Shown here: positions 601 to 54,406 of the stretch, piece by piece | How positions within the stretch are numbered: position 1 is the stretch's first letter | Layout of the letters: every line of letters begins with the position of its first letter | Assembly (NCBI RefSeq): GCF_006345805.1 | Contig: NC_043000.1 | Span: 36,642,001 to 36,706,000 of the forward strand | Direction: 5' to 3' | DNA: 64,000 nt | Origin: Octopus sinensis | Lineage: Eukaryota | Notes under the pieces: generated by a model | What the model was told of the DNA's origin: nothing | Database searches by the model: none | The model's input: the letters and a program-made list of their open reading frames with translations, nothing else | Made by a program: the position numbers and the translations under genes

Positions 601-645
601 AACAAATCGCTCCTGAATCTATCAATTGTTTTTCATCGTTTATCC

Positions 646-850
646 TTATACTTGTTTCAGTCATTAGACTGTGGTCATGCTGGAGCACCGCCTTGATGAA
701 TTTATAGTCATACATTTCGACATTAGTGCTTGTTTTACTTTGTAAGCCTGGCACGTATTTTATCGGTCTCTCTTTTTCCGAACCGCTAGATTACGGAGAC
801 GTAAACTCACCAACACCGGTTGTTCAGCGGTGACAGGGGAGAAACACAGA
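646..850 (-). mobile_element. SINE family A, 3' half
   Basis: cttgtttcagtcattagactgtggtcatgctggagcaccgcc is the reverse complement of the tail of the complete copy at 14329-14723. Confidence 0.85.
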
Positions 851-867
851 TGAAAAGACACACACAG

Positions 868-910
868 ATATATATATATATATCTGTGACTGTGTGTGTG
901 TGTGTGTGTA

Positions 911-962
<52 letters not shown>
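868..962. repeat. Compound microsatellite (TA)n/(TG)n/(TC)n
   Basis: Direct reading. Confidence 0.95.
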
Positions 963-966
<4 letters not shown>

Positions 967-1067
967 ATAGAGGGCATTATTACAATAAATGCCTCACACT
1001 AGGAGGGACAAAGTCATTACTACCCGATAATTTCTTGTTAAGATCCTTATTAAGAGATTATCCTTAA

Positions 1068-1296
1068 TTATATATATATATATATAATATATATATATAG
1101 TGTGTGTGTGTGTATGTATATATAGTGTGTGTGTGTGTATGTATATATAGTGTGTGTGTGTGTGTATGTATTATATATGTGTGTGTGGTGTATGTATATA
1201 TATGTGTGTATATATATGTGTGTGTATGTATGTATATATGTGTGTGTGGTGTGTGTATGTATATATATGTGTGTGTGTGTGTGGTGTGTATATATA

Positions 1297-1327
<31 letters not shown>

Positions 1328-1360
1328 GTGTGTGTATGTATGTATATATGTGTATGTGTG

Positions 1361-1393
<33 letters not shown>

Positions 1394-1425
1394 ATATATA
1401 TATATAATATATATATATATGTGTG

Positions 1426-1479
<54 letters not shown>

Positions 1480-1506
1480 GTGTGTGTGTATGTATATATA
1501 TATATA
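1068..1506. repeat. ~440-bp compound (TA)n/(TG)n microsatellite
   Basis: Direct reading. It generates the C/V/Y/I/M-only ORFs in the track. Confidence 0.95.
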
Positions 1507-4046
1507 CGATTGTCTTTGGGTTTCCGTCCCGAGAACTATGCAGTTAGTGAGAAAACTTCAAGCCGCACACCCACATCTGTGCCTAGAAAGTATATTCGAG
1601 AGTGGAATCATATAATTATCGTTCTCAGTATTTAACTAAGTCAATTTGAATTTTTTCTAAATTTTCTTTTTCATCATATTTTCTAATACATTGCAATCTT
1701 CAGTAAGTACTTATTCCTGTGTCCATCCAGTCATACTGTGGCAGAAGTATGCTTTGTATATACATATTTCACTACACGAGTGCGAAACTCTTTCAACACC
1801 CACACACGCACACCCACACACGCACAGAAGGTCATTTGTATGTTGGCGCGTAATAAACTCGGTGCAGATGAGTGTAATAACATTATTGTTACCCAAGGGA
1901 GAAAAACAAATTCCTTTCGATGATGAGAAATTACAGAAAATACAAGAAATAATAAAATAGGAAGAAATAGTCTCTATTCTAACCGCATACCTTCCTTCCG
2001 ACACGGGGACAAAAGTTAAGCCTCTAAGTTGGCTAGCCATGTATGAGTTTTGATGTAAGGCCACACCAAATACAATAAGATGGAAAGTCCACGCCATATG
2101 TCAATGGATAAAAAGAATGTAAGCTATGCGTAGCTGAAAGAACGCAGATCCATTTCAAATCTAAAACCTCCACCGCACTGCTGAATTCCAGATGTGAAAT
2201 TTTTAGCAGTTGTAAATATATGGATAAGTTCCTGTCAACGAATTGGAAAACACCACCCTCTCCAGATTAAGTAGCTGTACTGCAGACTCTACGCCACTAT
2301 CTATTCGGCCATATGACTTTACGGCCAAAGGGAACATAACCAAAGTTCACCACCCCCATTTCTTATTTTTCGACTCTCCACCTTTTACATCTATCCCTTC
2401 TCATCTTTCCTGTCATCCTATCGTCCTGTTTTAGCTTGTTGTGCCATATGGGCATAGCTTGAGGATTGCGTGAAATCACTAGATGTGTTAAAAAATGTAC
2501 TCTGAGATGTTTCCATCGGATGAAACTTGTAGTCGGTCATAAGAATATATATATAATACGTAATTATTTAGTGTACATAATGCACAACTTCTATATACTA
2601 TAAAAAGTCGGCAGGGGAAATTGGTTGACACATTTATATATGGGTATAATAAAGAAGCCCAAAACTGTGATAGATTTTCTTGGTTTCCAACTCTTTGGGG
2701 ATTTTAGCAATTAGTAAAACCTCGCGAAGAATATTCTGATACAATGATGGACTCTGGATTTGTAGTTTCTTAATACTATGCAAGTGCAATCATTACAACT
2801 TCCGTTCGACCATTATCATATAGTTCTTGCTATAAATGTTATGACACTTGACTCGGATCCTGTGATCGATTTAATTCATGGCTATTGTTTAAAAGAATTA
2901 TCGATTTCTACACCGATACAAGTCCTTGATATATACACCCCGAAGACATTCAGTAATAATAGCCTCCGTATCTTACTGGTATTTCATCGACATATTTGAA
3001 GTAGTTCGTAATTAAATGCTGCAAAATATTTAAGTAAAATAAGAGAACTTCGATGTAATTAACATGATTAATTGGATACCCTTGAGATAAATTAATAGAT
3101 TTGCGTATTTTAGATGTTTACATTATTTGTACAGCCTGTAAGTGATATTATATTTGTGAACTATATTCAAATTTCTTTTGTCATAACAAGCATTATAAGT
3201 TATTGATATATTGATGTATTACGTTACATAAATATAAACAAATCCACCTCTAATGCATATATCATGCAGAACCTATCAAATTCCATCAGATATGCAATTT
3301 ATTGCTTTGACATATTTGTAATCATCGCAAGATGTGTTCGATGAAAGGAATAAAAATCAAGTAAAACAAGAGAATCTAAAAAGGAAGACATCTACAATAA
3401 TTCTTCTAAAGAAAGGTATGACGTTTAACAATCAAGAAATATTGGGGAAAATATGTCCTTATCAGGTTTTTGCTTCGCTTCATTTTGGCACAAAATATTA
3501 CTTATCTTCAAGACGTCTGTATTGAATGAATAATTTAAATCATACTTGAGGTATTTCCAATTTAATTACACAACTTTACTACATTAACCCCAACACAAAA
3601 TTAATTACTATGCTTTTCTCTAATTTTTCTTATATTTCATGCAGTCTACGGCCCATGTAAGGAGAAATATTATTGAGATAATTTAATTATGGTAAATAAC
3701 TGACGTTCAAAATAACACATGAAGTATATTTTAAACGTAGATACTGAAAATATTTTCTTTCTGACTTAATTTCTACGACAGACTAATGTCATCGAATCTA
3801 AAATTATCTCGTTTATATTTTCTATCAATCGTAAATATTGATTTCCTAATTTCAAGTGTATATTATTTCGAATTTTGTCCCAATAAATGTCGGTTACGAC
3901 ATAAAATGTGGATCGACTTCACATTTTTGCTTCTAATAATTAGAATTTTCGTATTCAGTTTTGGCTTCGATCGCTTATAATTACGTTAATAGCATAAATA
4001 AGTTTACTTTATTTATCTAAACTAACAAATTGTTTTTCTTTTGTAG

Positions 4047-4340
4047 TTATCTCTTACTGTCGTTAAAGGACCCAATAATGCAACACTATCAAAATATATC
4101 AACGTTGTACGTCAATAACGAAACTTTGATATCTGCTATCGCATGTTAGAACTTCGTACACTTTCCTATGGAGAGTGAAATTATTTAGTCACGGCTCTAA
4201 TGGCTGATCCTTACCACATGACCGCAGTTTCAAAAATAATTAATTACTCATCTATAGAAACCTATTGGATATATTTCACCTTTTTTCTAGATTACATTCC
4301 TCCATTACAAACTTCGCACCCTTCTAAGCACTTCGAGGTA
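4047..4340 (+). pseudogene. TUBB: Beta-tubulin pseudogene exon (about codons 175-285) with preserved splice acceptor
   Basis: One frame from 4047 reads LSLTVVKGPNNATLS...FDICYRMLELRTLSYGE*NYLVTALMA...FFLDYIPPLQTSHPS, versus beta-tubulin VSDTVVEPYNATLS...[27 protein letters not shown]...FFMPGFAPLTSRGS. It has 2 stops. It is preceded by ACTAAC (4021), a pyrimidine tract and AG (4045-46). Confidence 0.8.
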
Positions 4341-5822
4341 GACAGTTAATATTTCAGCGAAGTAAATCCTTGCAATGAGAGATAATAGATTTTTGCGCCT
4401 TCAGTCTTCATTTTATAAAATTATTTTACTTCTGGTTAATTTAAATTTTCTAAATGTTAATTAAGATGTAATATTTTTAGATCTGTTATATTCGTTAGGA
4501 AAGTCAAGACAAAAATTGGCATTCATTATTTTGTGACAAGTATCTATAATTCATTTGATTTCAAAAAGTTGTAAATATTATATGTTAGTTCCAATTTTCG
4601 AATTCAATTATCAAAATAAACTTTGGTTATTGGTGTACTTAGACGGCAAGATGGTGGACCTGTTAGGACGTCGGACGAAACGCTTAGCAGCATTTATTCC
4701 GGTACAAATTTACCTTTCCTGTCATCGGGATCGATAAAATAAAATACCAGACACTGATGTTTTATTTCCCATAAGGGGTACATACAGAAGGGGACAATAC
4801 AAGATATGTGGGGGTGCGAAACAAAACAAAAAAATCATATGTAAACAAGATGAAATGAAAAATGAAATTAAAGATGTAATGAAGCTTCTCGGCCACAACT
4901 CCGAGTAGATTCATTTCTACCTTTTTAACACTTTTTAAACTTTGTACCGGCCAAAATATCCACTTTGTATTCCTGTAACAACTCTAAGAACGTTAAGTTA
5001 CATGGTAACTGATTAATATTTGCAGCCACCTTCCAACATTTATATATCTATTTTTGTATTTCATTATTATTGATCTTTGCTCTTCAGTTTATAATATTAG
5101 GCAACGATGCCTTCCTTCATAAAGTATCAGACACGTACTGGGATCGGTGTGATATAGATGCCCCATTCCCTAAAATAATGCTGTCATTGAACTCTACAGT
5201 TGCCCTGTTCAGGGGTAATTTCGATTACTCATATACCGGGAAATGCGTGTAACCGAACTCGCGGGACTTCGAGCGCGAGAAAAACAATGAACGTGTTTAA
5301 TCGTATATTATTAGTAGCTTGGCATATATTTTCCTACAGAGTTGAAATTTCTGGACAAAGTTTCGAATGAAATACTATAATAGAACACTTCATCCTAAAT
5401 TCCTTCATAATTATTTTAACAAGACAGATGCATCATTGGAGGGTTTTCCAGGATAAGTTCCTTTCTTTTAAATATTATTTGATGTTGGTTATTACAAACG
5501 TTGATCATTATTGCGATTTCCGTCTGGTGAAGGCTTCCAGTTTTGATCTAATTCCGATCCATGCAGATTTCTATATTTAGCCATTCGGTGTCTACAGTTT
5601 TCCTATATTATCTCAAAAAGAGACTTTTAATTTAAATAACAATTGGAAATATCCAACATAAAAATATTTTTTTTACGTGTCTAAGGCCAGGATTACCATC
5701 AGAAATACAATGCAATTGATGCTTGATATATTTTATTTTTGCACGTGTGGAACTTTGTCAACTGATGTCTTAAAGTCGATCAGATTTTAGAGTACAATTA
5801 AAATTATTGAGTCGGGTATATA

Positions 5823-6026
5823 CGAGGTGGGTGCAGGAAAAGTCTTTGGGTAAAAGAAAATAAAGGAGGATCAGTTAATTATGATTTTATTCAACAATTT
5901 TCTTCTCTCAGATTCACACACTTATTGCAGTCGTCTTTCGGTTTTTATAAGACCTCTAAAAGTTGGGTCCCCAATCAGGCCTTTTCTCGATAACGTTAAA
6001 GCCAGGAAATGTTCAGCACCTCCTCG
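5823..6026. mobile_element. Mariner-derived MITE
   Basis: TA|cgaggtgggtgcaggaaaag ... aaagccaggaaatgttcagcacctcctcg|TA gives imperfect TIRs with a TA duplication. The interior is shared with 29245-29438. Confidence 0.75.
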
Positions 6027-6030
6027 TATA

Positions 6031-6220
6031 TCCAACAGAGGCCTCAAAAGACATGTTAAGATCCACAAAGAGCGGAACTTATCTGCAGGTCTCGGTGGTC
6101 CAAATCAGAGGTGCAATCTATGTGGGTGTCTTTTCAGAACATTGTCTGGTTTAAAAATCCACATCAGAAGCCATGATGGTGCTAAAGTGTAGGTACAGGA
6201 GGTGGTCAAACTCTGTATAA
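6031..6220 (+). mobile_element. 3' end of RTE-type LINE with C2H2 zinc fingers
   Basis: SNRGLKRHVKIH...CNLCGCLFRTLSGLKIHIRSH, then a stop and a short tail. The same terminal C2H2 architecture occurs in the RTE at ~47080-47150. Confidence 0.6.
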
Positions 6221-6539
6221 TGAATATACATCCACCATGAATATATATATATTGGAAATAATTTTTTTTATTAATGAAGAGTTGAATTTTATTTTGATTA
6301 GTGATAATTTTATGACATAACCATTAAAAGCATTGTGTGGAGCCAAAATATACATAAGATATATCTCTTAGAAGGTTTGTGTCCTGGATTCTAGTTTGTG
6401 TAACTATGAAATATTACTTTTATAGAGTGGCTGTACTAAACACTGTTAGTTTGACATATGTAAGTTATTTGCGATTTCTTTTTATAGCGAGGTAATCCCT
6501 TCCTTGTAGCGCATCTGATTGCAATAACCGCGAAATCTC

Positions 6540-6690
6540 CCTCTAATCATATCCTACAGCCTGAAGTACGACGGAAACATTCGGTGATATAGACGAAGAT
6601 ATCCATTAAGAATAATGTCACGGCTAGAATACCGTTGACCCTGGATGACCTTCGACAGACAGAACTCCCAGTTCTCTTCCTCGATAAATG
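6540..6690 (+). pseudogene. Tentative beta-tubulin remnant (about codons 205-255)
   Basis: With frameshifts: LK.TTETFGDID / ISIKNNVTARIPLTLDDLRQ versus [38 protein letters not shown]. Confidence 0.45.
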
Positions 6691-7654
6691 ATTTGTTGAG
6701 TGAAACATTAAAAGTTTTCATTTCAACAAGATAACTACATTTATATTCAAACTGCTACTTTTCGTTATACTTTATTATTACGTATATTTGTTCCCTGTAA
6801 AACATTATCCTGCCATGGTAGCATGTGACTTTCCAGACTGCTAGGACAGATGCAGTAACGATGGGCACCTCTTGCAGCAGGTGTTAATAGAGATTACTAC
6901 CCACACTTTCACATGCCTTCATTGAATCACGGAATTTTTCATTGGAGGTTTTGCCTTTTTCACTTACGGCCAGACAAGGTATGCGACACGCAGCAGAGAT
7001 GTCAAGCGACACCTGTGCCTGGTGGTTTTTAAGGTTAAAAATTCTCTCACGGGGACAATCCTAGTCTACAAACAACGTTTGCATTTTCCCAAAAGGACGA
7101 ACTTTTCCCCATCGTTCGATGCAAATGATGTCACAGGTGTTACATCAGTGATTTCTTTCCTTTAGAAGAAGAGGTCTAAGAAAAGGTTAGGGGACTCTCA
7201 TTATTCAACAGCGGAGAAGCTGTTGAATGGCCGTTAATTCTACTTTGTCCATCCACTATTTAGCATGTTTTGATTTACCACACACCTTGCCAAGCAGATT
7301 CGGTTAAGTTTTCAGTTTAGTAACCGATGGTCCAACCATGCGAGAGCTTGTCCTCTGTTTTATAATTCCATTAGCACTATATATAAATGTGTATGTGTGT
7401 GTGTTTAGCGTATATACGTACGCGTATAAAGAGTCATGAAGAGGATAAGAATGCTGTAGACAGAAGGTTTAATGAATAAGTGCAGAGAGGTCAATATGAA
7501 CGAGATATGTTCATTTATATCTCCGTGTGAAGATGTACTAAAAGTAACAAATACGCAGGTTCGAGCGTCTGCATTTTTCTCATATATTTGTTTGTATATG
7601 TAATATTCTCACGAGTAGACAGAATCGTTAGCTTTCCGGAAAAAAAACACTCAG

Positions 7655-8105
7655 CGACATTTCATCCGTCTTCAGATTCTGAGTTCAGATTCTGTCGAGG
7701 TCGACATTGCCTTTTATGCTTTCGACTCATTAACCCATAAAGTGCTGGGACTTGCACTTAGACAGCATAGACTGCTGAGCACATTTTTATGAAAACAAAA
7801 AATAGTTAAAATATCTTCTTAGTATACAATGGTGGCAAGTTTTACATCACCTGAAAAGTCATTAGTCGTCTTGCATTCTGGGGAGATATCGGAGCGTTTG
7901 AGTGACATTAGACCCCTAACAAACGCCCATAGATTAAATGCATCTATCTGGACCACGATTGGCCTGTCGACCTGTGCCTGACCGCCACGATCGTGGCCCG
8001 TCGCGCTCTATGTGTTAAAATAAGTACCAGTTGATAACTGGAGTCAATGTAATCGACTAGTTCCTTCCACCAAAATTACTGGCCTTGTGCTAAAATTTGA
8101 AACCG
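7655..8105 (+). mobile_element. SINE family B split by a piggyBac-type MITE
   Basis: ttctgagttcagattctgtcgaggtcgacattgcc lies before the insert, and aataagtaccagtt...ggccttgtgctaaaatttgaaacc resumes after it. Confidence 0.7.
7734..8014. mobile_element. piggyBac-type MITE, copy 1
   Basis: TTAA (7730-33) cccataaagtgc ... gcgctctatgtg TTAA (8015-18). Colinear with 56029-56331. Confidence 0.85.
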
Positions 8106-8329
8106 ATACTTTCCTTTCACCTGGTGTTAATCCTTACTCCTGCTTCTAAATTTGCCAGAGTCCTTGTTATTTCCTCCTGTCAATATCGGCTTTGCCTTCT
8201 TCCGTCAGCCTACATTACAGCCACCCTTAAGTATTAGTCTTAACACTCGTGTCATTGGTGTAAGGTTTAATTTTTAATATGTACCGCTTAACTTGCTTTA
8301 CTAATGTCTTTTAATACCAGATATAATTT

Positions 8330-8960
8330 GCAGACAGTACTGATGGGTGCTGTCTCTCCTATTCTATTGAAAAATTAGTATCCTATGGTCACCTGATCAC
8401 AACATATTTTCCTATCTAACACCATTCTCACAGATTCTACAAAACAGTCACGTGTACTCTTCCTTCCTTTTTAATAAGACTAAATTGTATAAAAAAAATA
8501 AAGTAATTTATTTGTATTAACGAAATTTTGTCCTTAATATTTGCCGATATTTCTGAGTTCAAATCCAACCGAAATCAAATCGCTTTTTGCTCTTCGGCAG
8601 TCGATAATATCATGTAGGACTCAAGCACTGGTGTCGATATCATCGACCATTCCTTCCCTTTAGTTCCCAGCCTTGTGCCTCTTTCTACGAAATCAATTTT
8701 GATTGAGAGATGCCGTCATTACTTTCCTCAGATTCCACAGTTTTATTTCGATTGAAATATCAAAAACGTTTCATCTCTCGTGAATCAATTAACAAATCGG
8801 AAAAAAACTATAACCTTATTAACAGGAAGCCATATCGCAGACATTTGGCCATTTAATTACTGTATAAATTTAAATAACCAATATTTGAAATCTGCCAGGG
8901 ATGTGTAATGTTGACATATACAGAAGCACGGAACCAAATGTGGAGTAACGCTTAAGTATG
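8330..8960 (+). pseudogene. Tentative beta-tubulin remnant interrupted by a SINE (8545-8700)
   Basis: tcctatggtcacctgatcac (8381; SYGHLI vs TYGDLNH), gtcattactttcctcagattc (8715; VITFLRF vs VTTCLRF) and gaagcacggaaccaaatg (~8924; E...QM vs ELTQQM) occur in the correct order. Confidence 0.45.
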
Positions 8961-9096
8961 GCCTTTTCAGTTGTTGAATGGTTAGTAATGGTTTATGAGG
9001 ACTTCAATTAATTATGTTACTCTTCTATAAATATGTCGTTTATGTCTTTGAGCTTGTGGGAGAAAGCAACTAATATTCAAAATATGTTTTTTTTAC

Positions 9097-9397
9097 CATT
9101 TACTTGTTTCAGTCACTATTCTGTGGCTATGCTGGAGCAACTACTTGAAGCGTTATAACTGAACAAATCGACTCCAGGATCTATGCACTTTCTAAAAGTC
9201 TGTTATTCAATTGGTCTCTTTTGCCAACCCGCTACGTTACGGGGGCGTAAACAAACCAACTTTTCACACAAGGCTTTGGTCAGCCCAGTACTAAAATTGA
9301 ATATTCTTGTCCGAGGTGTTGCACAGTGGGATTGAACCCAAAACCACGTTGTTGCAAGGTGAACTTCTTACAAACACGCAACCGTGCCTGTGCCTAT
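9097..9397 (-). mobile_element. SINE family A lacking the central microsatellite
   Basis: Tail and tRNA-like head both match 14329-14723, and the middle is deleted. Confidence 0.8.
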
Positions 9398-10025
9398 GTA
9401 TGGACAAATAATGTGTGTCTTACTTTTGGATTACTCCTTTTGATTGGAATACACGTCTAGAAAAAGAGAGGCAGAAAGAAATGGTATGCATGTTTGTGTA
9501 TAGATCTGTATGTTGAAAGGGTTCCGTTTATGGACCGGAGGAATATAAAGTGTAATAACCTGATATTTATGTGAGAGCTGTTTACTGTAACCAGAGACCC
9601 ACGCTGAGCAGGAATTTAGGTATATTGCAGCATGTTAGACCGATGCATGTTGGCACGAATAGGGATCGAATAAAAGGCCCTGGTAGCTGGTTGATATTCT
9701 TTTATTTTTTATTTTAGATCCAAAAGAATAGAATGCAATTTGACCTCATCTGGATTTGAACTCGGAAGAAATACGGCCGTATATTTGATTGACGCTAAAG
9801 CCATTCCGTCAGTCCTGCACCATCGAGAGGAATTAATTAGTATTTCTATTGAAAATACAAATTAATATCTAATAGACCATTGGAAATTTTCACAAAAATC
9901 TTGCATGAAAATTTTGCCACGTTCTACCTAAAGAATGATTGCGACGTCCTTCATGACTAGAGAACTTCAATCCACGAAGAACATGTTTTATTCGACGGTC
10001 GACAGTTCGATTCCAATGTCTGTCA

Positions 10026-10640
10026 GGAGGGGAGATCGTTCATTTTAATACTATTGTTTTCTATGAACACCGTATCAGTTCTAATGGAATCTATTGTGGT
10101 AATAATGACTTACATTTAAATTGACTACGTCTAATATAATGAAGTACCGGAAGTATGTATCACGCGTTATTTTGTCGACTTGGAACCTGGCACAATGGAT
10201 TCTGTTTGTCCGGTGAACTCTTACGACCAAATAATTTCCTTTTTGGCCAATGCCGAATTGGTATCAACTGAACCAAATGTTACTTACACAGAATTTACCG
10301 AATTGGTTGCTACTAGCATGGAAGTAGAAGCTAAAAAGGTGTAACTGCTTTCATGGCTTTCATATGAGTATGTTTATCTTCGAGAGTATCGGGACCTACA
10401 CGGAAAATATAACGGGAAGAGCATCTTGATGGAATGGTAAAGAGGTTCTCTGTTGGCCGCTTCACGCAAAGTAAGTCATTTTTTTATATTGCCTCTCCTT
10501 GTTGCAGGCCGTTGGCTGCTTTTTGGAAATCACAGATATAAATGTAACGATTTAGTATACAGTGACTTCTGGTAACGACTAACGCGATTGTGCAATAAAT
10601 ATATTATCCTGATTAAACCTAACCCGTGTAATTTAATCCC
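10026..10640 (+). pseudogene. TUBB: Beta-tubulin pseudogene (about codons 1-225)
   Basis: EIVH (10032), EHRISSNGIYCGNNDLHL vs EHGIDPTGTYHGDSDLQL, KYVSRVI, exact VDLEPGTMDSV (10174-10206), RPNNFLFGQ (10224), YTE..ELV, REEH, then a GTAAGT...TTGCAG intron (10471-10507) after the PK-equivalent codon. Multiple stops and frameshifts. Confidence 0.92.
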
Positions 10641-11355
10641 AGTAATTACAATAGTTGTTTAATACATTTGAACAGTCTGACTAACCTATCACACTTATAT
10701 TTTAATATTGTTTTGTTTATTAAACAAATTATTTATTAAAAAAACATTAAGAATATATTTCTTATACATATGTATAAAAGTTTCTAATTTCAGTTTATAT
10801 TATGAGATTTTAATGCTGATTTATTAATTAATTAATTATTCGTAATGTTAATATAATATTTTGTGTAATATTCATTAGGAATGATCAGTTATTAATTTAG
10901 AAGGTATTTAATATTTATTGTTATTTGAGAAACGGCGTTCTGTTTACTAACCGAAAGTTAAAAATATTAAAATTTTGGTTCCAATTTTAAAGTGAATATA
11001 ATCAAAATGTGAGTTTAGTCACAAAATGCCTTAGTAAAAGCGCTGTGTAATACGATTTTTACTCTCTCTCTCTCTCTTACACACACAAATATGTATGTAA
11101 TAAAAAAGTTATTAACAAGGGATTATCAATTTGGACAAAATACTTCTTTAGCTCTCTGTCCATATAAATACTTAACAAAAGGTTTTCCGGTTGGTATAAT
11201 CGACCGATTGAGTAAAAGGAACCATTAACAAACTTATAATGCATATCAGAAGGAGTTGCATATCAACGATACACAAATTTGTTAAGCCCATTATGCTTTT
11301 TTCCATATATATTTGGATGTATAAAAGTGTCTACACACACACACACACACACATA

Positions 11356-11545
11356 TATTAGGTTGGTGCATGATTATTGTGGCTGTTTTTCAACAAATTT
11401 TATTCAACAAAAACAATAACAATATTTAACAAAAGCATCTTTAAATGACGGTCTGACCGTCTGCCAAGCAAATGGGAAGCGGTAATTGAAGTAGATGGTG
11501 AATATGCTCCGGGATAATCATTTAAAATGTTTTTATTACATGCTG
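11356..11545 (+). mobile_element. Mariner deletion derivative (left TIR plus transposase C-terminus)
   Basis: TA-ttaggttggtgca mariner-type terminus. LPSKWEAVIEVDGEYAPG* resembles the mariner C-terminal LPERWQKVIEQNGEY. Confidence 0.65.
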
Positions 11546-11875
11546 TTATTGTTGAATAGGCTCCGTCCTTGCTTAGTGCAATTCTTGCTTCTATAAAGTT
11601 TTTAATTCTGTTCCAGTTATTCTTTGTATATTTTCGCTTTTGTAACTGCTGTTGTAGTAAATTATTCCTGTTCTTCATCGTTTACTAATGTTGTTGTTTA
11701 GTCTATACTACTATTACTTCGTCTATAAACAAATGTGGATTCTGTATATAGTAGTACTTCCATTCATGTACAAACACACACATTAATGCATTCCTCTACC
11801 TCCTCCTCTAAATCTACACGTGTGTGTATATATGTTGGTGGGGATAAATCCAGTGTAGATAATACTGAGAGGTAG

Positions 11876-14160
11876 TTTTTTTTATTGCGCACAAGGGGCC
11901 AACACAAACACATCTGGGGGCATAGGATCTTTACTTTTGACCTACAGATTTAAAAAATAATTTTTTGTAACTAAATACTTTCAAACTTTGGACACTGGTA
12001 GAATGTGTCATATAAAACATCTTTTACTCTTAGCATTTTTGAGAAAAACTTATATTTACGAAGTTATTTCACCTTAAAGTTCTCGTATTTCAGTAATTTC
12101 AACCAATCAATGACGTGTATTCAGCGGAATAAAATTACTGCCGTTGTTTGTCAACAACAACTTCCGGCTGTGTATATTTCGTTTGTCACAGTTATTTATG
12201 ACAACCCTAACCTTAAAACCAGTACACATGCACGAACGATGTCATAAATAACAGTGACAAACGAAAAATACACCACCGATAGTTGTTGTTGACAAACAAC
12301 GGCAGTAATTTCATTCCGCTGAATACACGTCATTGATTGGTTGAAATTACCGAAATAGGACAACTTTAACGTGAAATAACTTCGTAAATATAAGTTTTTC
12401 TCAAAAATGCTAAGAGCAAAAGATGTTTTATATGACACATTCTACCAGTGTCCAAAGTTTGAAAGTGTTTAGTTACAAAAAATTATTTTTTAAATCTGTA
12501 GGTCAAAAGGTATAAATCCGGGACATATAACACAAAAATAGAATTAAAAATGAATCAAAATCAACTCCATTATGAAAATGAAAATGAGCTGCTAGCTCAA
12601 TCTCAAGCAGCAACACTTCCTTCCTTCTGAATGCCGATCCTTCAAAACGTCCAATCTGAATTTTTCTCTCAGTTCCTCATATCCTGCTTTTACCGGAATC
12701 CTTTTCAAGTTCACATCAATCTTCCAATACTAATAACCTATTTTTATATATTTTGCAATCGCTTGCTTCTGGCTCTGAGACACCAGTACACACATGTGTC
12801 AACCCACAACATTCGTCTATCCCTCCACATCCACAAATTTTGCTGTCTTCCACCTTGTTACCTCATTTATTAGTTCCTCGTCTACAACCTCTCTTAACAC
12901 ACATACATAACTATTTTCACGGGGGATGGGAATTTCATGTATCTTGTGACGTCTGTTTCTCTCACAATGTAAAACATTGTGAAGGAAGGGAATGGATGGA
13001 TTTGGTGTCTGTGAGGAGAGGAAGGGTCTGAGGGGTTATGTGTGAGTGGGGATGGCTAGGATGTTCCGCATCACACTGTCTTTTCTTTTCCTTTTTCTTC
13101 CCTCTGCCACTGTCCATAATTCTTCCTTTTTCCTTTCTTTCATCTGTACCTCCTCTTGCTTCTTCTCGAGCTCTTTAACCACTTTTGTACGCTATGCTTC
13201 AGCAGAGGGGAAGTGTGCTCTAATGTGGCCGTTTTGGCCACGTTTAAAACAGCTCGGGATTCTGCCCTCTACCCACACTATCAAGATTATGTATCCTACA
13301 GTCACCGTTTTCAAGGATTCTACTTCTGTCTGAACAATAAGTTCTAATGATTTTTCCTTTCCACATCACCTCCTCCGTTTCCGTGGCTTGGAGGACTGCC
13401 ACTTCCTCCTCACTTCCGAGGAGGACAGCCGCCGCAACCCAAGCCCCTTCTATGTCTGGCGGGATTCCCTCTACCCTGATCTTGGGTGTCCTCCTTCCAA
13501 GATACATGGTTAGAAGGACCACTTTATTCGATTTCACCGTATTTACAGCCACCCTCCTCGCTATTTCCTCCGTCTTGAACTGGACCACCACCGTCCCATA
13601 TTTTCTTCCTCTTGCCAAAAATACCATATCCTTAGATACCGCGCACAACGCCTTCTCAATTGTTTCAGCTTCTACTTGGTCTACCTTTTTCTGTTCTACT
13701 GAATAAACTTTATACACTATTGTTCTCTTCTTCATGTCCTCCATAACGTTCTGTGGAAGCGACATCTTTACGTCACCACTTACTTTATGAGCCATTTTTT
13801 TGTTCCAATTTAGACTAGTCTATATCATTCCTTTCTAGCTCCGTTACCTTAGCGAAACTCTTTCTTTCCTCAAGAGTTCTGTCCATTTTGTTTACTGCCT
13901 TTACTAATTCATCCTCTGAAGTAGACAATTCCGACACACAAAGGTCCGAATAGAACATTTTTTCATAAGCCATCGCTCTCTCTCTTGAAACAGAGAGAAA
14001 GCACAACCGGTAAACCGCTGCCAAGGAGTCCCCAAATCAACCCTTCAATACAACTCAATACACGTTCAAAAATACACTTACAATAAGAAGAGGTCGTAAC
14101 CGACAGAGTGATCATACAGAGAGGTGTCCAAATGAATTTATGCGAGCTTAAATTCCACCT
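11876..14160 (-). mobile_element. Non-autonomous ORF1-only (Tx1/L1-like) retroelement with a nested foldback element
   Basis: ORF pieces 14024-13815 and 13795-13244 are joined by a stop and a +1 slip in an A-run. They encode an L1/Tx1 ORF1-like region (GRRTPKIRVEGIPP) and a decayed CCHC knuckle CFKRGQNGHIRAHFP (13251-13210). No EN/RT follows. The 3' tail ccccttgtgcgcAATAAAaaaaa is at 11900-11876. Confidence 0.7.
11934..12510. mobile_element. Foldback MITE: ~270-bp inverted arms, 36-bp spacer, TA-flanked
   Basis: 11934-12203 is the reverse complement of 12240-12509 with few mismatches. TA at 11932-33 and 12511-12. The spacer begins with ACCCTAACC. Confidence 0.9.
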
Positions 14161-14328
14161 CCTTCATCCAGGGTCAGCATCTCCGTCTCGAATGTTAGCT
14201 GAAAGAGTAATCTTTGCTGAGTTGTTATGGAGGTAGTAAGTTAGGTGGATACAGTTAGGCTTCTGACAGATATATGGAGCACAAATTTCAGATAATAAAA
14301 TAAAGATTATGTAAAATTTGACCTCGAC

Positions 14329-14723
14329 AGGCGCAGGAGTGGGTGGGTGGTAAGTATCTTGCTTCCCAACCACGTCGTTCCGTGTTCAGTCCAACTGCGT
14401 GGCACCTTGGGCAATTGTCTTCTACTATAGCCTCGGGCTGAACAAAGCCTAGTGAGTAGATTTGGTAAACGGAAACTGAAAAAAAAACCGTAGTGTGTAT
14501 ATATATGTGTGTGTGTGTGTGTGTTTGTGTGTCTGTGTTTGTGCCCCACAAACCGATATTGGTGTGTTTACGTCCCCGTAACTTAGCTGTTCAGCAAAAG
14601 AGAGTGATAGAATGAATAATAGGTTTACAAAGAATAAGTCCTGGGATCGATTTCTTCGACTAAAGGCGGTGCTTCAGCATGGCCGCAGTAAAGTGAATGA
14701 AACCAGTAAAAGAATAAAAGAAT
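14329..14723 (+). mobile_element. SINE family A, full length
   Basis: tRNA-like head, cttgggcaa core, central (TG)n and an AAAAG-type tail. At least 8 related copies occur in the window. Confidence 0.9.
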
Positions 14724-15190
14724 AGTGTTTTAAGGTTGCCATATTGATGAGTAAAAGGTGTTTGGCATCATAGGTGTGCGATAAGTGACAAGTCCAGCTG
14801 AAATTGTTCAAGTATATTAGACATCTATTTTGAAGTGTAGAATGGCAAACACGATTTCTCCTCGTGTTCACCTGAGCATCTCCTCAACTATCATCACGAA
14901 ATAATTGACTTTTCTAGCCACTTTCCGCATCGCTTCAAGACTCATAACGTAGGTTATGGCCATCTTGACCCAGCTGTCGAGATGACTTTATATTATCTTC
15001 ATTTTAGAATCTGTATTGTGCGATCCATATCAATGTCTCAAGACTAACTCTATCCACCTGCTACCCGTGTGTGTTAGTATTTATACATCCACGTGGATAA
15101 TATATTAAACCAGAAAACGCACGATGTGCGAATATTTATCGCTCTACCAAATAACTCTCTCTCCCTCTCTCATATATATACATAATATAT

Positions 15191-15398
15191 ATTCTTTTAC
15201 TTGTTTCAGTCATTTGAATGCGACCATGCTAGGGCACCACCTGTTAGGCGAAATCGACCCCGGGACTTATTCTTTGTAAGCGTGGTACTTATTCTATCGG
15301 AATCTTTTGCCGAACCGCTAGATTACGGGGATGGAAATGCACCAACATCAGTTATCAAGCGATGGAGGACACACGCACGCGCGAGCACACACATACAT

Positions 15399-15472
<74 letters not shown>

Positions 15473-15637
15473 GACGGGCTTCTTTCAGTTTCCGTCTATC
15501 AAATCCACTCACAAGATTTTGGTCGGCCCGAGATTATAGTAGAAGACACTTGCCGAAGGTGTCACGCAGTAGGACTGAACCCCGGATCATATGGTTGGTA
15601 AGCCGACCACTTACCACACAGCCACGGCTGCGCCTAT
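15191..15637 (-). mobile_element. SINE family A, full length
   Basis: Reverse complement of 14329-14723 with an expanded (CA)n/(TA)n centre. Confidence 0.9.
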
Positions 15638-16926
15638 GTATATATCATGTTTGCATTTTACCACTCCGGGGTCGATAAAACAAAGTACAGGTCACATAAT
15701 CGATTAACCCCCTCCAGCAAAATTTCAGGCTAGCAATTTAGGGGCGGGGTTTTGTGTTTACCCGCCTCCCACTCGTTTTCAAAAGGTACTAATTTTATTA
15801 TCCTCAGAAAAGGAAAGGCAAAGTTGACCTTGGTAGCATTTAAATTCTGAAGCTTGAAAGTTAGCAGAAATGCTGCTAAGCATTTTGTTCGACGCACTTG
15901 CGATTTAGCCTTCTCGTGAAGTATTTAGTGATAATATTTTACAAAGAAGTTTCGAAAAAAAAACTAATCTTTGAGATTTAATGATTTATTAAGGTATTCA
16001 AAAATGGATCAATCCCCTGCTCCACATACGAGTGTCAAAGAAAGACTGAAATTCGGAAGGTCAGTTGCAGTGTGCAAATATCTCTTATTTCAATGAAATT
16101 TTAACCTCTCCGTAATGTATAACTCCCCAGCAGCGGACACATTTTTTACCTCCTGATAAACCTAACATCATCGTGTAATATCTGTTCAAGAAAACCTATA
16201 TTTCCATATATCAAAATGATTTCTTTCTAACTGCTTAATTAGATACTTTTGAACGATTGAGGTTCTCGCGTCTCATCCAAAGAGAAAACTAACGGTCAGG
16301 TTACAGTTTCCTGTCTGTCGGATAGCATTGAACAAAGTAATCAGCCAGATAAAAAAAAAGTATTTTAGAAATACAGGGAGATATAATATTAATTTGTTTA
16401 TTGAAAGAGATGTTTTTCTGCTCATTCTTATCTCTGAATCTTTGTTCACTTTCAAACACCCACGGTGCACTCATATTTCCTTTCTCTCTCTCTCAAGTCA
16501 CTTGAAACAGAAATATATTAAGTCCTTCTCCCCCCTCTGACACCGCTTTCCTCGTTTACAAATTTCATTCAAATACCAACCTGAAATGATTCAAAGTCAA
16601 TTCGAACTGTTGACAACCGTAAACTACTTGAGATAAAACATGGCTATGAATTTAACTTCCTACTCACACACGCTTCCTATTAGTACACAATTAATATACA
16701 ATATTTCAATGATTTCGCCAATGATGTTCCCATAAAATAAGGAATCACAGTTTGATATATCGTGGAAGATCTAGAAAGTTCTCATCAACCGTACCACCAA
16801 CACGATCTTACAAAAAAAAGAAACAGTAAAACCGAAAAATCTCATAAATTAGAATAATCCCTGCTAGCCTAGATTTCGTGTCTTCCAGTCGCGGTAGGAG
16901 CTACATTGTCGACTTTAACAAAAGAT

Positions 16927-17046
16927 TCTTAGAATTCGATGGAAACATTCAATCTTCCTCTAGACATATTTCAAACGTGTGCTTTTGGAAATGAAAAATA
17001 TATATTCCATGAACAGAACTGCACTGCTGCCACTGTGGTCTTTTAG
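16927..17046 (+). pseudogene. Tentative alpha-tubulin-like remnant
   Basis: LR.FDG, then in one frame LDIFQT...EKYIFHEQ...F*, versus alpha-tubulin LRFDGALNVDLTEFQT...EKAYHEQ...FE. Confidence 0.35.
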
Positions 17047-17523
17047 AAAGTTAGCGAATTCTCCCCGACTTTCTCTATCTCCTAGTAAATTTATAATGAT
17101 TTAATACGCCATGTCATGGCTGGACAATAAACTGTACAGTCAACTCAATTATTATCATACAGGTAGGGTGGAACGGTGTGGGTGAGGTTCACATAAATCT
17201 CCATAATGTCGACCAACTATATTGTTATTGACACTAGCACTTCCGATATGCTTACATTGTATAATCAGTGAATAGCACAAACCGCAAGCAAGAACCACCA
17301 ACCCCGACACCGATCCGTCTCACATACTTGTCGTTCATTACTGGCTGCACGAAATATATTCACTATGTTTATTAAATGATTTAGCTGTTCTTGACTTATT
17401 TCCAATATATTTCCGAAAATCGACTTTCTACTCTTTGCTAAGTAAAAACCAATATTCCGTTCGGTTTATTTGTCATATCATGTGACATACTAATAATTTC
17501 ACTATATATATATGTATGTATGT

Positions 17524-17595
<72 letters not shown>

Positions 17596-19625
17596 ATCCA
17601 CCTACATATACACATATATAAAGTTTACTACCGTGTGCAAATATTCAAGAAACAATTCAATGTTTTGAAATAACTTTTCAAATATACTACCGGCGGCGGC
17701 GGCGATGTTAGTGTATTTGTGATTCATCTCTTTTGTTTAGTTGTGATTACAGTTTCTTTTTGGTTATAATAATAGTTCGGTGCTGTTTATTCCTTTATGA
17801 CTCTCTTCAAATGTGTAAACAAAAGCTGATTAAGAGCGGGGAAAACCTAAATGGTAAAAATAAATATTAAGCTATGAAAGGGAATTAAAGGCTTGCTAGA
17901 CTCATTATACATTTACCACATACAATGGAATACGATAAAGAAACGTGAAATATGTTTAAAATGCGAATATATCCATTGACTGCCATTGTGTAAAGGTGTC
18001 AAAAGGGGAATGAAATCTAATGCATAAACTAGTTAAAGGTTTCAAGAATAACGTTTTAGAAAGGTAATTGAGTAACGACTGAAGCGGCCTCACGATTGCT
18101 GCAGTGGATTAATTTGGTAATCATTTTTGTGAATCCTATGTTTGTGTTCAGGGTTGACTGGAGAGGAACAATAAGGAAAAAAAAGATTTTTTAATCTTTA
18201 AAAAGAGCAAAGAATGGAGATAATTAGAAGTAAATCGGTGTTTGGAAATTTAGACTCACTTCAAATGATCTTTAGGGCCTTGTTAATAGAATGCTGTAAT
18301 TGTTGTATCGTCCTATGTTCGTTCTAACTCAGCAGACCTGTATTCAGGGGAGATTCATCCGTGTCCATTCCGACACAATGTCGGAATGGAGACGTTTATA
18401 TGATTTAGTGTGTGTTTGCACTTAAAAAATGGAACAACGTGATTGGTGAAGTTTTTTGGAAAGGAAACACTACAGTGATAAACAGTTGCCCCCTCATTCC
18501 CACAAACACCGGGGCAAAGAACGGTTAGCCAATAAATAGCAGTGAGGACTATTTAGGGTCATTTGATCTTAGCAAGCGGGAGTTATGTTCTACATACTTT
18601 TTGGAAACAGAATGAAAGCAGCATTAAAACATTGAATATATTTTCTCTATGTGAAGCAATCAAGTGATTTTCATTTACAATTCTATCTTTACATGCACCT
18701 TTCTCTTCACAGGCGAACTCAGTCGCCACACCTGCAGGAAATAGCTGTCAAATCATCCCGTATTAACACCGCTACTATAGTGACAATACTCTCCGAGTCG
18801 AATGGACGGTATTGTCAGAGCAGCAGCCATAGAATATTTTGATTAATATTGAACGCAGTGGAGTTGTATATGACTTTGTCATTTGTAGATGTGAAGATAC
18901 AACGGTTGAAATGTTGTCTGTATATTCTTGGAAGCGATCTGATGAGTGAATATGTTGTTTAAAAAAGAATGGTAGCTCCACCATCACAAATATGTTAGCA
19001 GCACTCTTGTCTAAGAAGCATCTGCACTTTGTGTGTTGGGTAAACAGCTGTTCGGGAGTGAATTACATTATCGGCTGCAAAGAGGAAATCCTGTCGTTTC
19101 GTAATAGTTTTGGATACTTGAAGAACATAAGCAGTAAATATGTAATTTCGTTACTGTTTTAGCGCGGAACTGATAGCATTCAGATGTGAGGCATCAGGCG
19201 AACGGGGCGGATGTTTGTTCTAAAATTATACAAGTCGTAATCTAAAGAGAAATGAATAAAATATTTGAGAGGAAGAGTATAGAGAGAGAGAGAGAGGCGA
19301 AATAATAGTTGAGTTAACAATGATGTTTAAATTTAAGCTCCTGTAATATTGCTTACCTGTATCTTTTCACTCCACATAAGAGTGCACACTCAGTGACACA
19401 GACAGTTACGCGCGCGAACATGCAATTTTATTGCTTTCGTTCAGCGACCTAGCTGGGGCACACGTTCAAGCGTTTGAGTTGATGGTATCGATCCATTTAT
19501 GTTGGCTACCAAATTCATTGATTCTTATGAGTATTTAACGTGCCGCTAAGTTATCAATCATAAAGAAACATAAGTTTTTAGACTGGTATGAATAGGGGTA
19601 GATGCAAACCTACAGCCATATATAT

Positions 19626-26760: not shown

Positions 26761-28063
26761 CATGTTGGTATCAAAAGGTTCCAGGACTAGTTCTGTAGCA
26801 CGCCAACAGATGACAGCACATGGCTGCCTGCGCAGTGAAAGCTACCAGTGCACACCTCATGAGGAAATGTGCAGAGTGGCATCACTGTATTGACTTTGCA
26901 TGTTGTGGAATTTGTGTTTGTGATTACGTGTATGCTGTAATCTGCGATTTTGTCATGGACAGGAACAAAGAGCCAACGTGAAATTCTGCGTTGAAATTGG
27001 GAAGTCTTCTACAGACCATTTGAGCATGCTTTGGCAAGTTTACGGCGACGCGGCAATGGGTTGCACGCAATGTTTCAAGTGGCAGGGCAATTCAAAAGCC
27101 GAAGATCTTCTCCTGAAGAGGATGAGCGATTTGGAAGACCTACCACGAGTGTCACTACCCCCGCACCTGGAAATGTGGAGAAACTTCATCAGCTTGTGTA
27201 TGAGGATCGTTGGAGGAGAACCAACGACATTTCTGATGCCGTTCATCTGTCGTATGGGTCCGTGCAGACAATCTTAACGTCTGAATTGAACATGCAGCTT
27301 GTCTCTGCCAAGTTTGTCCCCCTCCTGCTGACCACTGAGCAGAAGGATTAACACGTCGAAGGCTATCAAGGTCTCTGTCAGCTAATGACCTATCCTTCAT
27401 GTCTTGAATCATCACCGGTGACGAGAGTTAGGTCTACAGGTACGACACTGGGACGAAGCAGTAGTCGTCACAATGGAAGAGCTCTTCATCTCAACGACCA
27501 AAGAAGGCACGACAGAGCCGCGGCTCAATCAAGAGTAAGCTCATCGTTTTCTCTGGCATCCGCGATATTGCATCGAGGATTCAGTCCCCCGGGGTTCTGT
27601 TACGATGTTTTGAAGCGATTGATGGAGGACATTCGGCAAAAGAGATCTGATCTACGAAGAATTGGATTCTTTATGATGACACCTGCATCCTGTCACTTGC
27701 AGCCTGTCACCCAGCTCTCCTCGCTTGTGAGTTTCTCGCCAACAAAAAACGACATGGTATCGCTTTCGCACCCGCCTTATTTGCCAGATTTAGCCCCTGC
27801 AGATTTCCTTCTCTTCCCCCAAGATGAAAAGGCAGACCAAAGGCCACCGTTTCATTTCCGTTGTCAAGATCCAGAACGAATCGCAGGTTTTCGACTCACG
27901 AACAGAAAACAACATCCAAATCTGATCCGAAAAGTGGCGGGAACGCCGGAACCTGTGTATTGCTGCGCAAGGTGACTATTTCCAAGGAGATGACGCTAAA
28001 ACTTAGGTAAGTAAATTATTTTTACTAAACATAACTAATGCGGGAATCTTTGATATTACCTCG
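26761..28063 (+). mobile_element. Mariner family A, near full length (1.3 kb), inactive
   Basis: TA TSD (26759-60, 28064-65), ~30-bp TIRs and frameshifted transposase motifs: KFCVEIGKS, EDERFGRPTTS, VSAKFVPLLLT, HPPYLPDLAPADFLLFP. Confidence 0.95.
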
Positions 28064-28335: not shown

Positions 28336-28417
<82 letters not shown>

Positions 28418-28420
<3 letters not shown>

Positions 28421-28668
28421 CTTTACTACCCACAAGGGGCTAAACATAGAGGGAAGAACAAGGGCAGACAAACGGATTAAGTCGATTATATCGACCCCAG
28501 TGCGTAACTGGTACTTAATTTATCGACCCCGAAAGGATGAAAGGCAAAGTCGACCTCGGCGGAATTTGAACTCAGAACGTAGCTGCAGACGAAATACGGC
28601 TACGCATTTCGCCCGGTTTGCTAACGTTTCTGCCAGCTCGCCGCCTTCCACGTTTCTGCCAGCTCGCC
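28418..28668 (-). mobile_element. SINE family B, young full-length copy with a duplicated 5' end
   Basis: Nearly identical to 58956-59185. acgtttctgccagctcgcc is repeated twice at the head. Confidence 0.9.
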
Positions 28669-29244: not shown

Positions 29245-29438
29245 GGGGGGGGGGCTGAAAAGCTCCTGGCTATGACTAAAAGGAAATACAAGGGTTCAGT
29301 TAATTGATTTTATTTAAGATATTCACACACACACACGTTGCAGCGGCCCTTCAGTTTTTCTAAGCCCTGTAAATGTTTCTATCTCCAAATAGATTTTTCT
29401 CGATACCCTTAAAGCCAGGAACTTTGCAGCCCCCCCCC
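29245..29438. mobile_element. Mariner-derived MITE (same family as 5823-6026)
   Basis: ggggctgaaaagctcctggct ... agccaggaactttgcagcccc TIRs. Confidence 0.8.
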
Positions 29439-37780: not shown

Positions 37781-37915
37781 TCATTTATTTATATATAGAA
37801 TGTTTGTGTGTGTGTGCGTGAGCATATGTGTGAGTGTATGAGCATATTCAAGCGTGCGTGTGTGTGTGCATATTCGTGCGTGCGTGCGTGTGTGTGAGTA
37901 TATTCATATATATGC

Positions 37916-37973
<58 letters not shown>

Positions 37974-54357: not shown

Positions 54358-54406
<49 letters not shown>

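What the first reader, a model, noticed from the sequence alone, without database searches (positions are those of the whole stretch)
3640..17050. Graveyard of co-oriented tubulin genes
Seen: two clear beta-tubulin pseudogenes (4047-4340, 10026-10640) and further + strand patches at 6540-6690, 8330-8960 (beta-like), 6815-7030 and 16927-17046 (alpha-like). The same codon interval (~175-255) recurs in several of them. None appear in the ORF track. Inference: this is a relic tandem tubulin array with at least 2 and perhaps 4-6 copies, a birth-and-death cluster later invaded by SINEs and MITEs. An intact member may lie just outside the window.
Basis: partly seen in the sequence, partly recalled or inferred. 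Interest (0 to 1): 0.7.

Follow-up and report, generated by a model that had tools for sequence, protein, structure and literature searches.

The report
Three decayed beta-tubulin pseudogene fragments

Summary
The two strong beta-tubulin relics are real. A2 lies at 4047-4345 (codons 175-279). All three are on the + strand. Each keeps 39-50% amino-acid identity to beta-tubulin and carries 1-5 stop codons and about 4-11 frameshifts.

No fragment covers codons 280-445, and the window holds no intact tubulin gene. A1 overlaps both B and A2 in codon range, so at least two source copies existed, most simply three.

A2 and B are each followed by a homologous AT-rich block of about 210 nt that occurs nowhere else in the window. 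A1 and B are also still alignable as DNA. Both results point to local DNA duplication rather than separate retrocopy insertions. B ends at a GTAAGT and A2 begins after a pyrimidine tract plus AG, at the same codon boundary (174|175), which suggests an ancestral intron. A1 runs through that point without a break.

Verdict: an ordinary cluster of pseudogene relics.

The parts
2596..2915 (+). Relic A1: beta-tubulin pseudogene fragment, codons about 105-220. It is continuous across codon 174/175. 40/102 aligned residues are identical, with 1 stop and about 4 frameshifts. The GGGTGSG signature region is deleted.
   Evidence: tblastn E=0.04-0.07. Targeted alignment score 76 against a null maximum of 53. 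phmmer against PDB E=0.007 as a single stretch over residues 111-220, with only beta-tubulin among the 60 listed hits. Neither half alone finds beta-tubulin in PDB. In a local phmmer run the full fragment scores 18.5 bits, against 10.2 and 5.8 bits for the halves. The second half (2780-2920) against codons 175-225 gives p<0.0025.
4028..4046 (+). Splice-acceptor-like signal directly before A2: AAATTGTTTTTCTTTTGTAG, with 12 of 14 pyrimidines followed by TAG.
   Evidence: Read directly from the sequence. Sites of this kind occur at 1.4e-3 per nt on the + strand of the window.
4047..4345 (+). Relic A2: beta-tubulin pseudogene fragment, codons 175-279. 46/97 aligned residues are identical, with 5 stops and about 5 frameshifts.
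   Evidence: tblastn E=6e-5. Alignment score 120-136 against null maxima of 60-79. phmmer against PDB E=1.4e-11, all listed hits beta-tubulin. No tubulin signal downstream of it.
4407..4617 (+). A-block: AT-rich non-coding block (GC 0.20), starting 62 nt after A2. It is homologous to the B-block.
   Evidence: blastn 58.3 bits over 225 nt at 62% identity, against a shuffle maximum of 44. It is the only partner found in the whole window on either strand. MAFFT alignment. Global z=6.9 and local z=7.5 against 30-nt block shuffles. 68% identity in a global alignment. nhmmer did not report the pair.
9996..10476 (+). Relic B: beta-tubulin pseudogene fragment, codons 2-174 or 2-176. It is the best preserved: 80/161 aligned residues identical, 4 stops, about 11 frameshifts, GGGTGSG signature destroyed. 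The nearest ATG upstream is at 9983-9985 and is out of frame.
   Evidence: Alignment score 221-252 against null maxima of 60-75. tblastn E=1.6e-4. Pfam PF00091 E=2e-5, 25.3 bits. Beta score 221 against alpha score 63. DNA homology to A1 over codons 110-176, z=4.0.
10471..10476 (+). GTAAGT directly after the AAA codon for K174. It reads either as a consensus 5' splice donor or as codons V175-S176. Tubulin similarity stops here.
   Evidence: Sequence. GTAAGT occurs only 11 times on the + strand of the window. The region 10471-10790 against codons 177-270 gives p=0.57-0.79.
10789..11008 (+). B-block: AT-rich non-coding block (GC 0.20), starting 313 nt after B. It is homologous to the A-block.
   Evidence: Same evidence as for the A-block.

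Best explanation
The region holds non-functional remains of beta-tubulin gene copies that arose by local DNA duplication, tandem or segmental, and have since decayed neutrally for a long time. Three fragments survive, all on the + strand: A1 (codons 105-220), A2 (175-279) and B (2-176).

A1 overlaps both of the others in codon range, so at least two source copies existed. Three is the most natural reading.

A2 and B look like single exons of intron-bearing copies. B ends in AAA|GTAAGT, and A2 starts after a pyrimidine tract plus TAG, at the same phase-0 boundary between codons 174 and 175. Each is followed by the same block of about 210 nt of non-coding DNA. A deletion in B's copy could have removed the exon that corresponds to A2.

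A1 crosses that boundary without a break. It therefore comes from an intron-less version: a processed copy, or a paralogue without that intron.

No copy keeps codons 280-445, so the duplicated unit may never have included the 3' third of the gene. Nothing here is expected to do anything now.

Shown: the three fragments, that they are beta-tubulin and not alpha-tubulin, their lesions, the homologous downstream block, and the absence of further copies in the window. Inferred: the intron, the order of events and the age.
For: - Significance and beta-specificity of the three fragments.
- Stops and frameshifts.
- Overlapping codon ranges.
- DNA homology between A1 and B over codons 110-176: z=4.0, 55% identity.
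- Homologous block downstream of A2 and of B, found nowhere else in 64 kb: z about 7, 68% identity.
- Tubulin signal ends abruptly at 10476 and begins at 4047, with splice-like signals at the same codon boundary. GTAAGT occurs at 1.7e-4 per nt and acceptor-like sites at 1.4e-3 per nt.
- An intron one codon away (175|176), together with an intron-less second copy, is documented for a strongylid nematode beta-tubulin gene (PMC2751842).
- A1 continuity. The GC content of its second half (0.35) matches the coding relics (0.33-0.39), not the spacers (0.20-0.28).
- Tubulin families commonly contain many pseudogenes and tandem duplicates (PMC4202323).
Against: - GTAAGT can also be read as the codons for V175-S176, so the donor reading is ambiguous.
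- No clear donor follows A2.
- No homology was detected between the sequence after A1's codon 174 and the sequence after B, or between 4053-4406 and 10477-10788. The copy-by-copy reconstruction is therefore not demonstrated.
- nhmmer did not report the block homology.
- The block could be a short transposable element rather than part of the duplicated unit.
- A1 on its own is only marginal in window-wide statistics (E about 0.05).
- The intron structure of the functional parent gene is unknown.
- Having an intron-less fragment and intron-bearing fragments side by side is less parsimonious than a single origin.
Confidence: 0.75

Rival explanations
1. The fragments all descend from one or more processed (retrotransposed, intron-less) beta-tubulin pseudogenes, later broken up and partly duplicated by local rearrangement. 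On this reading the splice-like signals at 174|175 are coincidence.
For: Together the fragments cover codons 2-279 with no internal intron: B covers 2-176, A1 covers 105-220 and A2 covers 175-279. A1 crosses 174/175 without a break. Most known tubulin pseudogenes in mammals are single pseudo-exons (PMC4202323). A processed beta-tubulin copy is reported in nematodes (PMC2751842).
Against: B's end and A2's start fall at the same codon, with a perfect GTAAGT and a pyrimidine tract plus AG. My rough joint chance estimate for this is about 1e-5. The 313 nt between B and its block show no tubulin signal and no homology to A2. That fits a deletion within intron sequence better than a replaced coding segment. 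B keeps the 5' end and lacks the 3' end, the opposite of typical 5'-truncated retrocopies. No poly(A) tract or target-site duplication could be identified.
Confidence: 0.15
2. The tubulin pieces and the shared 210-nt block are cargo of a gene-fragment-capturing transposable element (Helitron-like or Pack-type). On this reading the cluster reflects transposition, not tandem gene duplication.
For: Only fragments are present, never a whole gene. Each of two fragments is followed by the same discrete block of about 210 nt, and homology stops on both sides of it. The window is rich in interspersed repeats.
Against: No terminal repeats or hallmark element ends were recognised. The block and the fragments occur nowhere else in the 64 kb. 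All three fragments are co-oriented within 8 kb, which fits local duplication. Copy number in the rest of the genome could not be tested.
Confidence: 0.07
3. The fragments are exons of a live, very divergent tubulin-like gene.
For: They are co-oriented, and splice-like signals flank A2 and B.
Against: Every fragment carries in-frame stops and frameshifts: 1-5 stops and about 4-11 frameshifts. The GTP-binding GGGTGSG signature is destroyed or deleted. The exon order is wrong, since A2 (175-279) lies upstream of B (2-176). No ORF of 90 aa or more overlaps any fragment.
Confidence: 0.01

Closest known systems
Tubulin pseudogenes and tandem tubulin duplicates, as catalogued for the eukaryotic tubulin family (Findeisen et al. 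2014, PMC4202323). [quoted passage not shown]
   Same: Beta-tubulin-derived sequence with stops, frameshifts and missing parts. Several copies lie close together on one strand. No function is expected.
   Different: These are far more decayed (39-50% amino-acid identity) and more fragmentary (about 100-175 codons each) than the catalogued pseudogenes, which were required to have at least 150 pseudo-coding residues. No intact neighbouring gene lies within the 64 kb window.
Beta-tubulin isotype 1 of the strongylid nematode Cylicocyclus nassatus (PMC2751842). One gene copy has an intron at codon 175|176, and a second, intron-less copy is interpreted as a processed pseudogene.
   Same: An intron at or next to the boundary seen here (174|175). 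Intron-bearing and intron-less versions of the same stretch coexist in one genome.
   Different: The position differs by one codon. The organism is a different phylum. Here both versions are dead and lie side by side. The intron here is inferred from splice-like signals only.

Membership tests
Beta-tubulin (derived from a beta-tubulin gene, not alpha) | Sequence similarity specific to beta-tubulin over alpha-tubulin and other proteins | tested here: met
   B scores 221 against beta and 63 against alpha. A2 scores 120 against 57. A1 scores 76 against 50. phmmer against all PDB sequences lists only beta-tubulin chains among the 60 hits shown for A2 (E=1.4e-11) and for A1 (E=0.007).
Functional tubulin (Tubulin/FtsZ GTPase, Pfam PF00091 plus PF03953) | Uninterrupted reading frame of about 445 codons | tested here: not met
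   Each fragment has 1-5 stops and about 4-11 frameshifts. Codons 280-445 are absent.
Functional tubulin (Tubulin/FtsZ GTPase, Pfam PF00091 plus PF03953) | GTP-binding signature GGGTGSG (codons 140-146) | tested here: not met
   The motif is replaced by unrelated residues in B and deleted in A1 (alignments).
Functional tubulin (Tubulin/FtsZ GTPase, Pfam PF00091 plus PF03953) | Pfam domain score above the curated cut-off | tested here: not met
   B scores 25.3 bits against a cut-off of 33 (E=2e-5). A1 and A2 give no hit.
Duplicated (unprocessed) pseudogene / tandem relic array | Homologous non-coding flanks shared between copies | tested here: met
   Blocks 4407-4617 and 10789-11008: z about 7, 68% identity, each the other's only partner in the window. 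Caveat: the block is only about 210 nt and nhmmer did not report the pair.
Duplicated (unprocessed) pseudogene / tandem relic array | Introns retained at parental positions | tested here: inconclusive
   AAA|GTAAGT ends B, and a pyrimidine tract plus TAG precedes A2, at the same boundary 174|175. However, A1 crosses that boundary, and the parent gene's structure is unknown.
Duplicated (unprocessed) pseudogene / tandem relic array | Copies adjacent and co-oriented | tested here: met
   All three fragments lie on the + strand within 2596-10476.
Processed (retrotransposed) pseudogene | Poly(A) tail and target-site duplications | not testable with these tools
   The 3' part (codons 280-445 and the UTR) is missing from every fragment, so there is no place to look for these marks.
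Processed (retrotransposed) pseudogene | Absence of the parent gene's introns | tested here: inconclusive
   No intron lies inside any fragment. The intron positions of the functional gene in this organism could not be obtained.

The most novel reading that the evidence does not exclude
The cluster is what remains of a lineage-specific tandem beta-tubulin array whose members differed in the presence of an intron at codon 174|175. That intron would be an old protostome intron, shared to within one codon with strongylid nematodes. Alternatively, the fragments plus the shared block are cargo of a gene-capturing transposon spread through the genome.
Probability: 0.15. Interest if true: 0.3.

Novelty: new member of a known kind. 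Interest (0 to 1): 0.12.

Why it matters
It matters little for biology. Dead tubulin copies are common, and these do nothing. There are three practical points:
- Annotation should mask three beta-tubulin relic fragments here, one of which lies outside the flagged interval, and should not call alpha-tubulin relics or 4-6 copies.
- Resemblances to a highly conserved protein picked out by eye need a null model.
- If the 174|175 intron is confirmed in the living paralogues, the relics give a small data point on intron conservation and loss in protostome beta-tubulin genes.

Tried and rejected
I used frameshift-corrected peptides with X at stops instead. Only B hit.
- The search for homologous proteins with B's peptide returned only six aberrant or truncated tubulins. 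None was from a cephalopod, so it gave no parent gene and no organism.
- Exact look-up of ten window ORFs in the protein collection found none, so neither the source contig nor synteny could be fetched.
- I searched for continuations of each relic using a chaining alignment that allows long jumps: B's tail, A2's tail, A1's head and the spacer between A1 and A2. All were at null level. An earlier alignment with cheap jumps had produced long chains that were noise.
- Two alpha-tubulin-like hits on the - strand (44643-45289 and 55437-56336) and a patch at 63253-63359 were rejected as lying within the null range or as selected after the fact.
- nhmmer with each relic and each block as query found only self-matches.
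- A pairwise alignment with cheap gap extension over-fitted noise.
- I first read A1 as exon plus intron, with GCAAGT as a decayed donor. I dropped this because the sequence after it is itself tubulin-like and is not homologous to the sequence after B.
- Rfam and tRNA scans, run to type the SINE-like repeats, found nothing.
- Pfam on ten long ORFs gave only one C2H2 zinc-finger hit.
- Literature searches for cephalopod or mollusc beta-tubulin pseudogenes or intron positions found nothing specific.
Full report
**Setting.** The window is AT-rich (GC about 0.32-0.46 in 2-kb bins). It is full of dinucleotide microsatellites and interspersed repeats and has no long genuine ORFs in the region of interest. 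It looks like eukaryotic intergenic or intronic DNA.

**Checking the observation.** I compared human TUBB and TUBA1A with the whole window in two ways. The two sequences were written from memory; tubulins are more than 90% conserved among animals.
- The first method was tblastn.
- The second was my own local alignment of protein against DNA that allows frameshifts. Its nulls were the reversed sequence and block-shuffled copies of the window.
- One-strand null maxima over 64 kb were 60-75 for beta and 57-83 for alpha.

Two beta-tubulin hits are far above this. One is at 9996-10718 (score 222) and one ends at 4345 (score 120). No alpha-tubulin hit exceeds the null: the best are 85 and 80, both on the - strand. 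The window contains no intact tubulin gene.

**Relic B.** The alignment covers codons 2-176 at 9996-10476.
- 80 of 161 aligned residues are identical, for example [25 protein letters not shown] and LRPNNFLFGQ.
- It has 4 in-frame stops and about 11 frameshifts, and the GGGTGSG signature is destroyed.
- Pfam Tubulin matches at E=2e-5, below the curated cut-off.
- The stretch from 10477 to 10790 has no tubulin signal under any penalty setting (p=0.57-0.79).

**Relic A2.** 4047-4345 matches codons 175-279.
- 46 of 97 aligned residues are identical, with 5 stops and about 5 frameshifts.
- An independent phmmer search of its corrected translation against all PDB sequences gives E=1.4e-11, and only beta-tubulin chains appear in the list.

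2596-2915 matches codons 105-220.
- 40 of 102 aligned residues are identical, with 1 stop and about 4 frameshifts. About ten codons around GGGTGSG are deleted.
- Window-wide it is marginal (tblastn E=0.04-0.07). As a targeted patch it scores 76 against a null maximum of 53.
- phmmer against PDB gives E=0.007 as one continuous stretch, again listing only beta-tubulin.
- Neither half alone finds beta-tubulin in PDB. In a local run the halves score 10.2 and 5.8 bits, against 18.5 bits for the whole.
- The second half against codons 175-225 gives p<0.0025.
- The GC content of the second half (0.35) matches the other coding relics (0.33-0.39), not the spacers (0.20-0.28).

I conclude that A1 runs through codon 174/175 without interruption.

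I scored each patch alone and compared it with 150 random segments of the same length from the window. The results were:

| Patch | p (beta) | p (alpha) |
|---|---|---|
| 6540-6690 | 0.05 | 0.51 |
| 8330-8960 | 0.09 | 0.03 |
| 6815-7030 | 0.45 | 0.17 |
| 16927-17046 | 0.41 | 0.06 |

They are uncorrected, and the patches were chosen by eye for their resemblance. None hits Pfam. In a window-wide scan with codons 160-280 only A2 stands out. The best-looking patch, 6568-6684 against codons 218-262 (17 of 39 identical), cannot be excluded as a very decayed relic, but there is no statistical support for it.

**No further pieces.** A chaining alignment that allows long jumps found nothing beyond chance in five places:
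- codons 175-445 downstream of B;
- codons 275-445 downstream of A2;
- codons 1-115 upstream of A1;
- the spacer between A1 and A2;
- directly upstream of B.

No relic of codons 280-445 exists in the window.

**How many copies, and how they arose.**
- A1 overlaps B (codons 105-176) and A2 (175-220), so it cannot belong to the same copy as either. At least two source copies existed.
- A2 lies upstream of B, so those two are most simply parts of two further tandem copies, giving three in all.
- A1 and B still align over codons 110-176 as DNA (global z=4.0 against composition-preserving shuffles, 55% identity).
- A2 and B are each followed by a homologous AT-rich block, at 4407-4617 and 10789-11008.
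- The evidence for that block homology:
  - blastn gives 58 bits against a shuffle maximum of 44, and each block is the other's only partner in 64 kb on both strands;
  - global z is 6.9 and local z is 7.5;
  - identity is 68%;
  - the alignment is shown.
- nhmmer did not report the block pair, so I treat the homology as well supported but not beyond doubt.
- Shared non-coding sequence next to two fragments, plus co-orientation within 8 kb, favours local DNA duplication over independent retrocopy insertions.
- Homology stops on both sides of the block. The block could mark the end of the duplicated unit. In that case the duplicates never included the 3' third of the gene and were dead on arrival.

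**A candidate intron.**
- B's tubulin similarity ends at AAA|GTAAGT (10468-10476). A2's begins right after AAATTGTTTTTCTTTTGTAG| (4047).
- Both boundaries lie between codons 174 and 175, in phase 0.
- GTAAGT occurs only 11 times on this strand of the window. Acceptor-like sites occur at 1.4e-3 per nt.
- The 313 nt between B and its block are AT-rich. They are not tubulin-like and are not homologous to A2. That would fit a deletion that removed most of the intron together with the next exon.
- A strongylid nematode beta-tubulin gene has an intron at 175|176 and also a second, intron-less copy (PMC2751842). An intron here is therefore plausible for a protostome beta-tubulin gene.
- Caveats:
  - GTAAGT also encodes V175-S176.
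  - No good donor follows A2.
  - A1 crosses the boundary.
  - The functional gene's structure in this organism is unknown.
- My reading is that A2 and B descend from intron-bearing copies, and A1 from an intron-less one (a processed copy, or a paralogue without that intron).
- I give that specific history roughly even odds. The overall conclusion, locally duplicated and decayed beta-tubulin fragments, gets about 0.75.

**Age (inference only).** Jukes-Cantor distances are about 0.42 between the two blocks and about 0.69 between A1 and B. This is very old neutral divergence, probably tens to hundreds of millions of years depending on the unknown mutation rate. It also hints that A1 split off earlier than A2 and B did from each other.

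**Surroundings.**
- Between and around the relics lie members of an interspersed repeat family: 636-883, 9092-9260, 14329-14721 and 15190-15639, with more copies at about 49 kb and 57.8 kb.
- Other repeats lie at 5851-6023, 7612-7724 and 7729-8089.
- A foldback element has 270-nt arms (11934-12203 and 12240-12509, 95% complementary).
However, I could not type the repeats: there were no tRNA or Rfam hits.

**Comparison with what is known.** Tubulin families are known for many pseudogenes and for tandem duplicates in which one member dies. [quoted passage not shown] This locus is another instance, older and more fragmented than those usually catalogued. It is a new member of a known kind and of low interest.

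**What I could not do.** I could not obtain the source genome, the functional paralogues or related species. Still untested are:
- the intron structure of the parent gene;
- genome-wide copy number of the block and the relics;
- synteny with related species;
- whether an intact gene lies outside the window.

Noticed in passing
window 11934-12509: Foldback or palindromic element with 270-nt arms (11934-12203 and 12240-12509), 95% complementary, separated by 36 nt. It lies about 0.9 kb downstream of the B-block and is MITE-like. The high arm identity suggests it is much younger than the tubulin relics.
   Followed up: partly
window 5881-6192 (+), with a partial repeat at 29277-29436: A 103-aa ORF whose C-terminus matches a C2H2 zinc finger (Pfam zf-C2H2, E=9e-5, just below the curated cut-off). 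Part of it (5851-6023) is 72% identical to 29277-29436. It is probably a fragment of a zinc-finger gene or of a repeat that carries one.
   Followed up: partly
window 636-883, 9092-9260, 14329-14721, 15190-15639, about 48987-49402, about 57824-57979: An interspersed repeat family of about 170-450 bp, with copies 67-77% identical to one another in both orientations. The 15190-15639 copy contains a dinucleotide microsatellite. It is SINE-like in size, but no tRNA or Rfam head was detected.
   Followed up: partly
window 860-1550, and similar tracts near 15420, 17500-17620, 28340-28430, 37900-38000 and 54100-55100: Long, imperfect TG/TA-type microsatellite tracts. They create spurious 90-150-aa ORFs rich in Cys, Val, Tyr and Ile, and they cross-match one another in self-comparisons.
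   Followed up: no
window 26978-27975 (+), 44547-46742 (+), 55175-55920 (+), 13244-13795 (-): Clusters of 100-196-aa ORFs in the more GC-rich parts of the window. They look like remnants of transposable-element proteins. None of those tested matched Pfam at E<0.01, and none is present as an exact sequence in the protein collection.
   Followed up: partly
window 63253-63359 (+): A short patch resembling alpha/beta-tubulin codons 237-265 across a frameshift (tblastn sum E=0.44). As a targeted patch it scores 45 against a null maximum of 39 for alpha. It was picked from a whole-window scan, so it is not significant. It lies at the far end of the window and would be worth re-testing if the neighbouring sequence becomes available.
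   Followed up: partly
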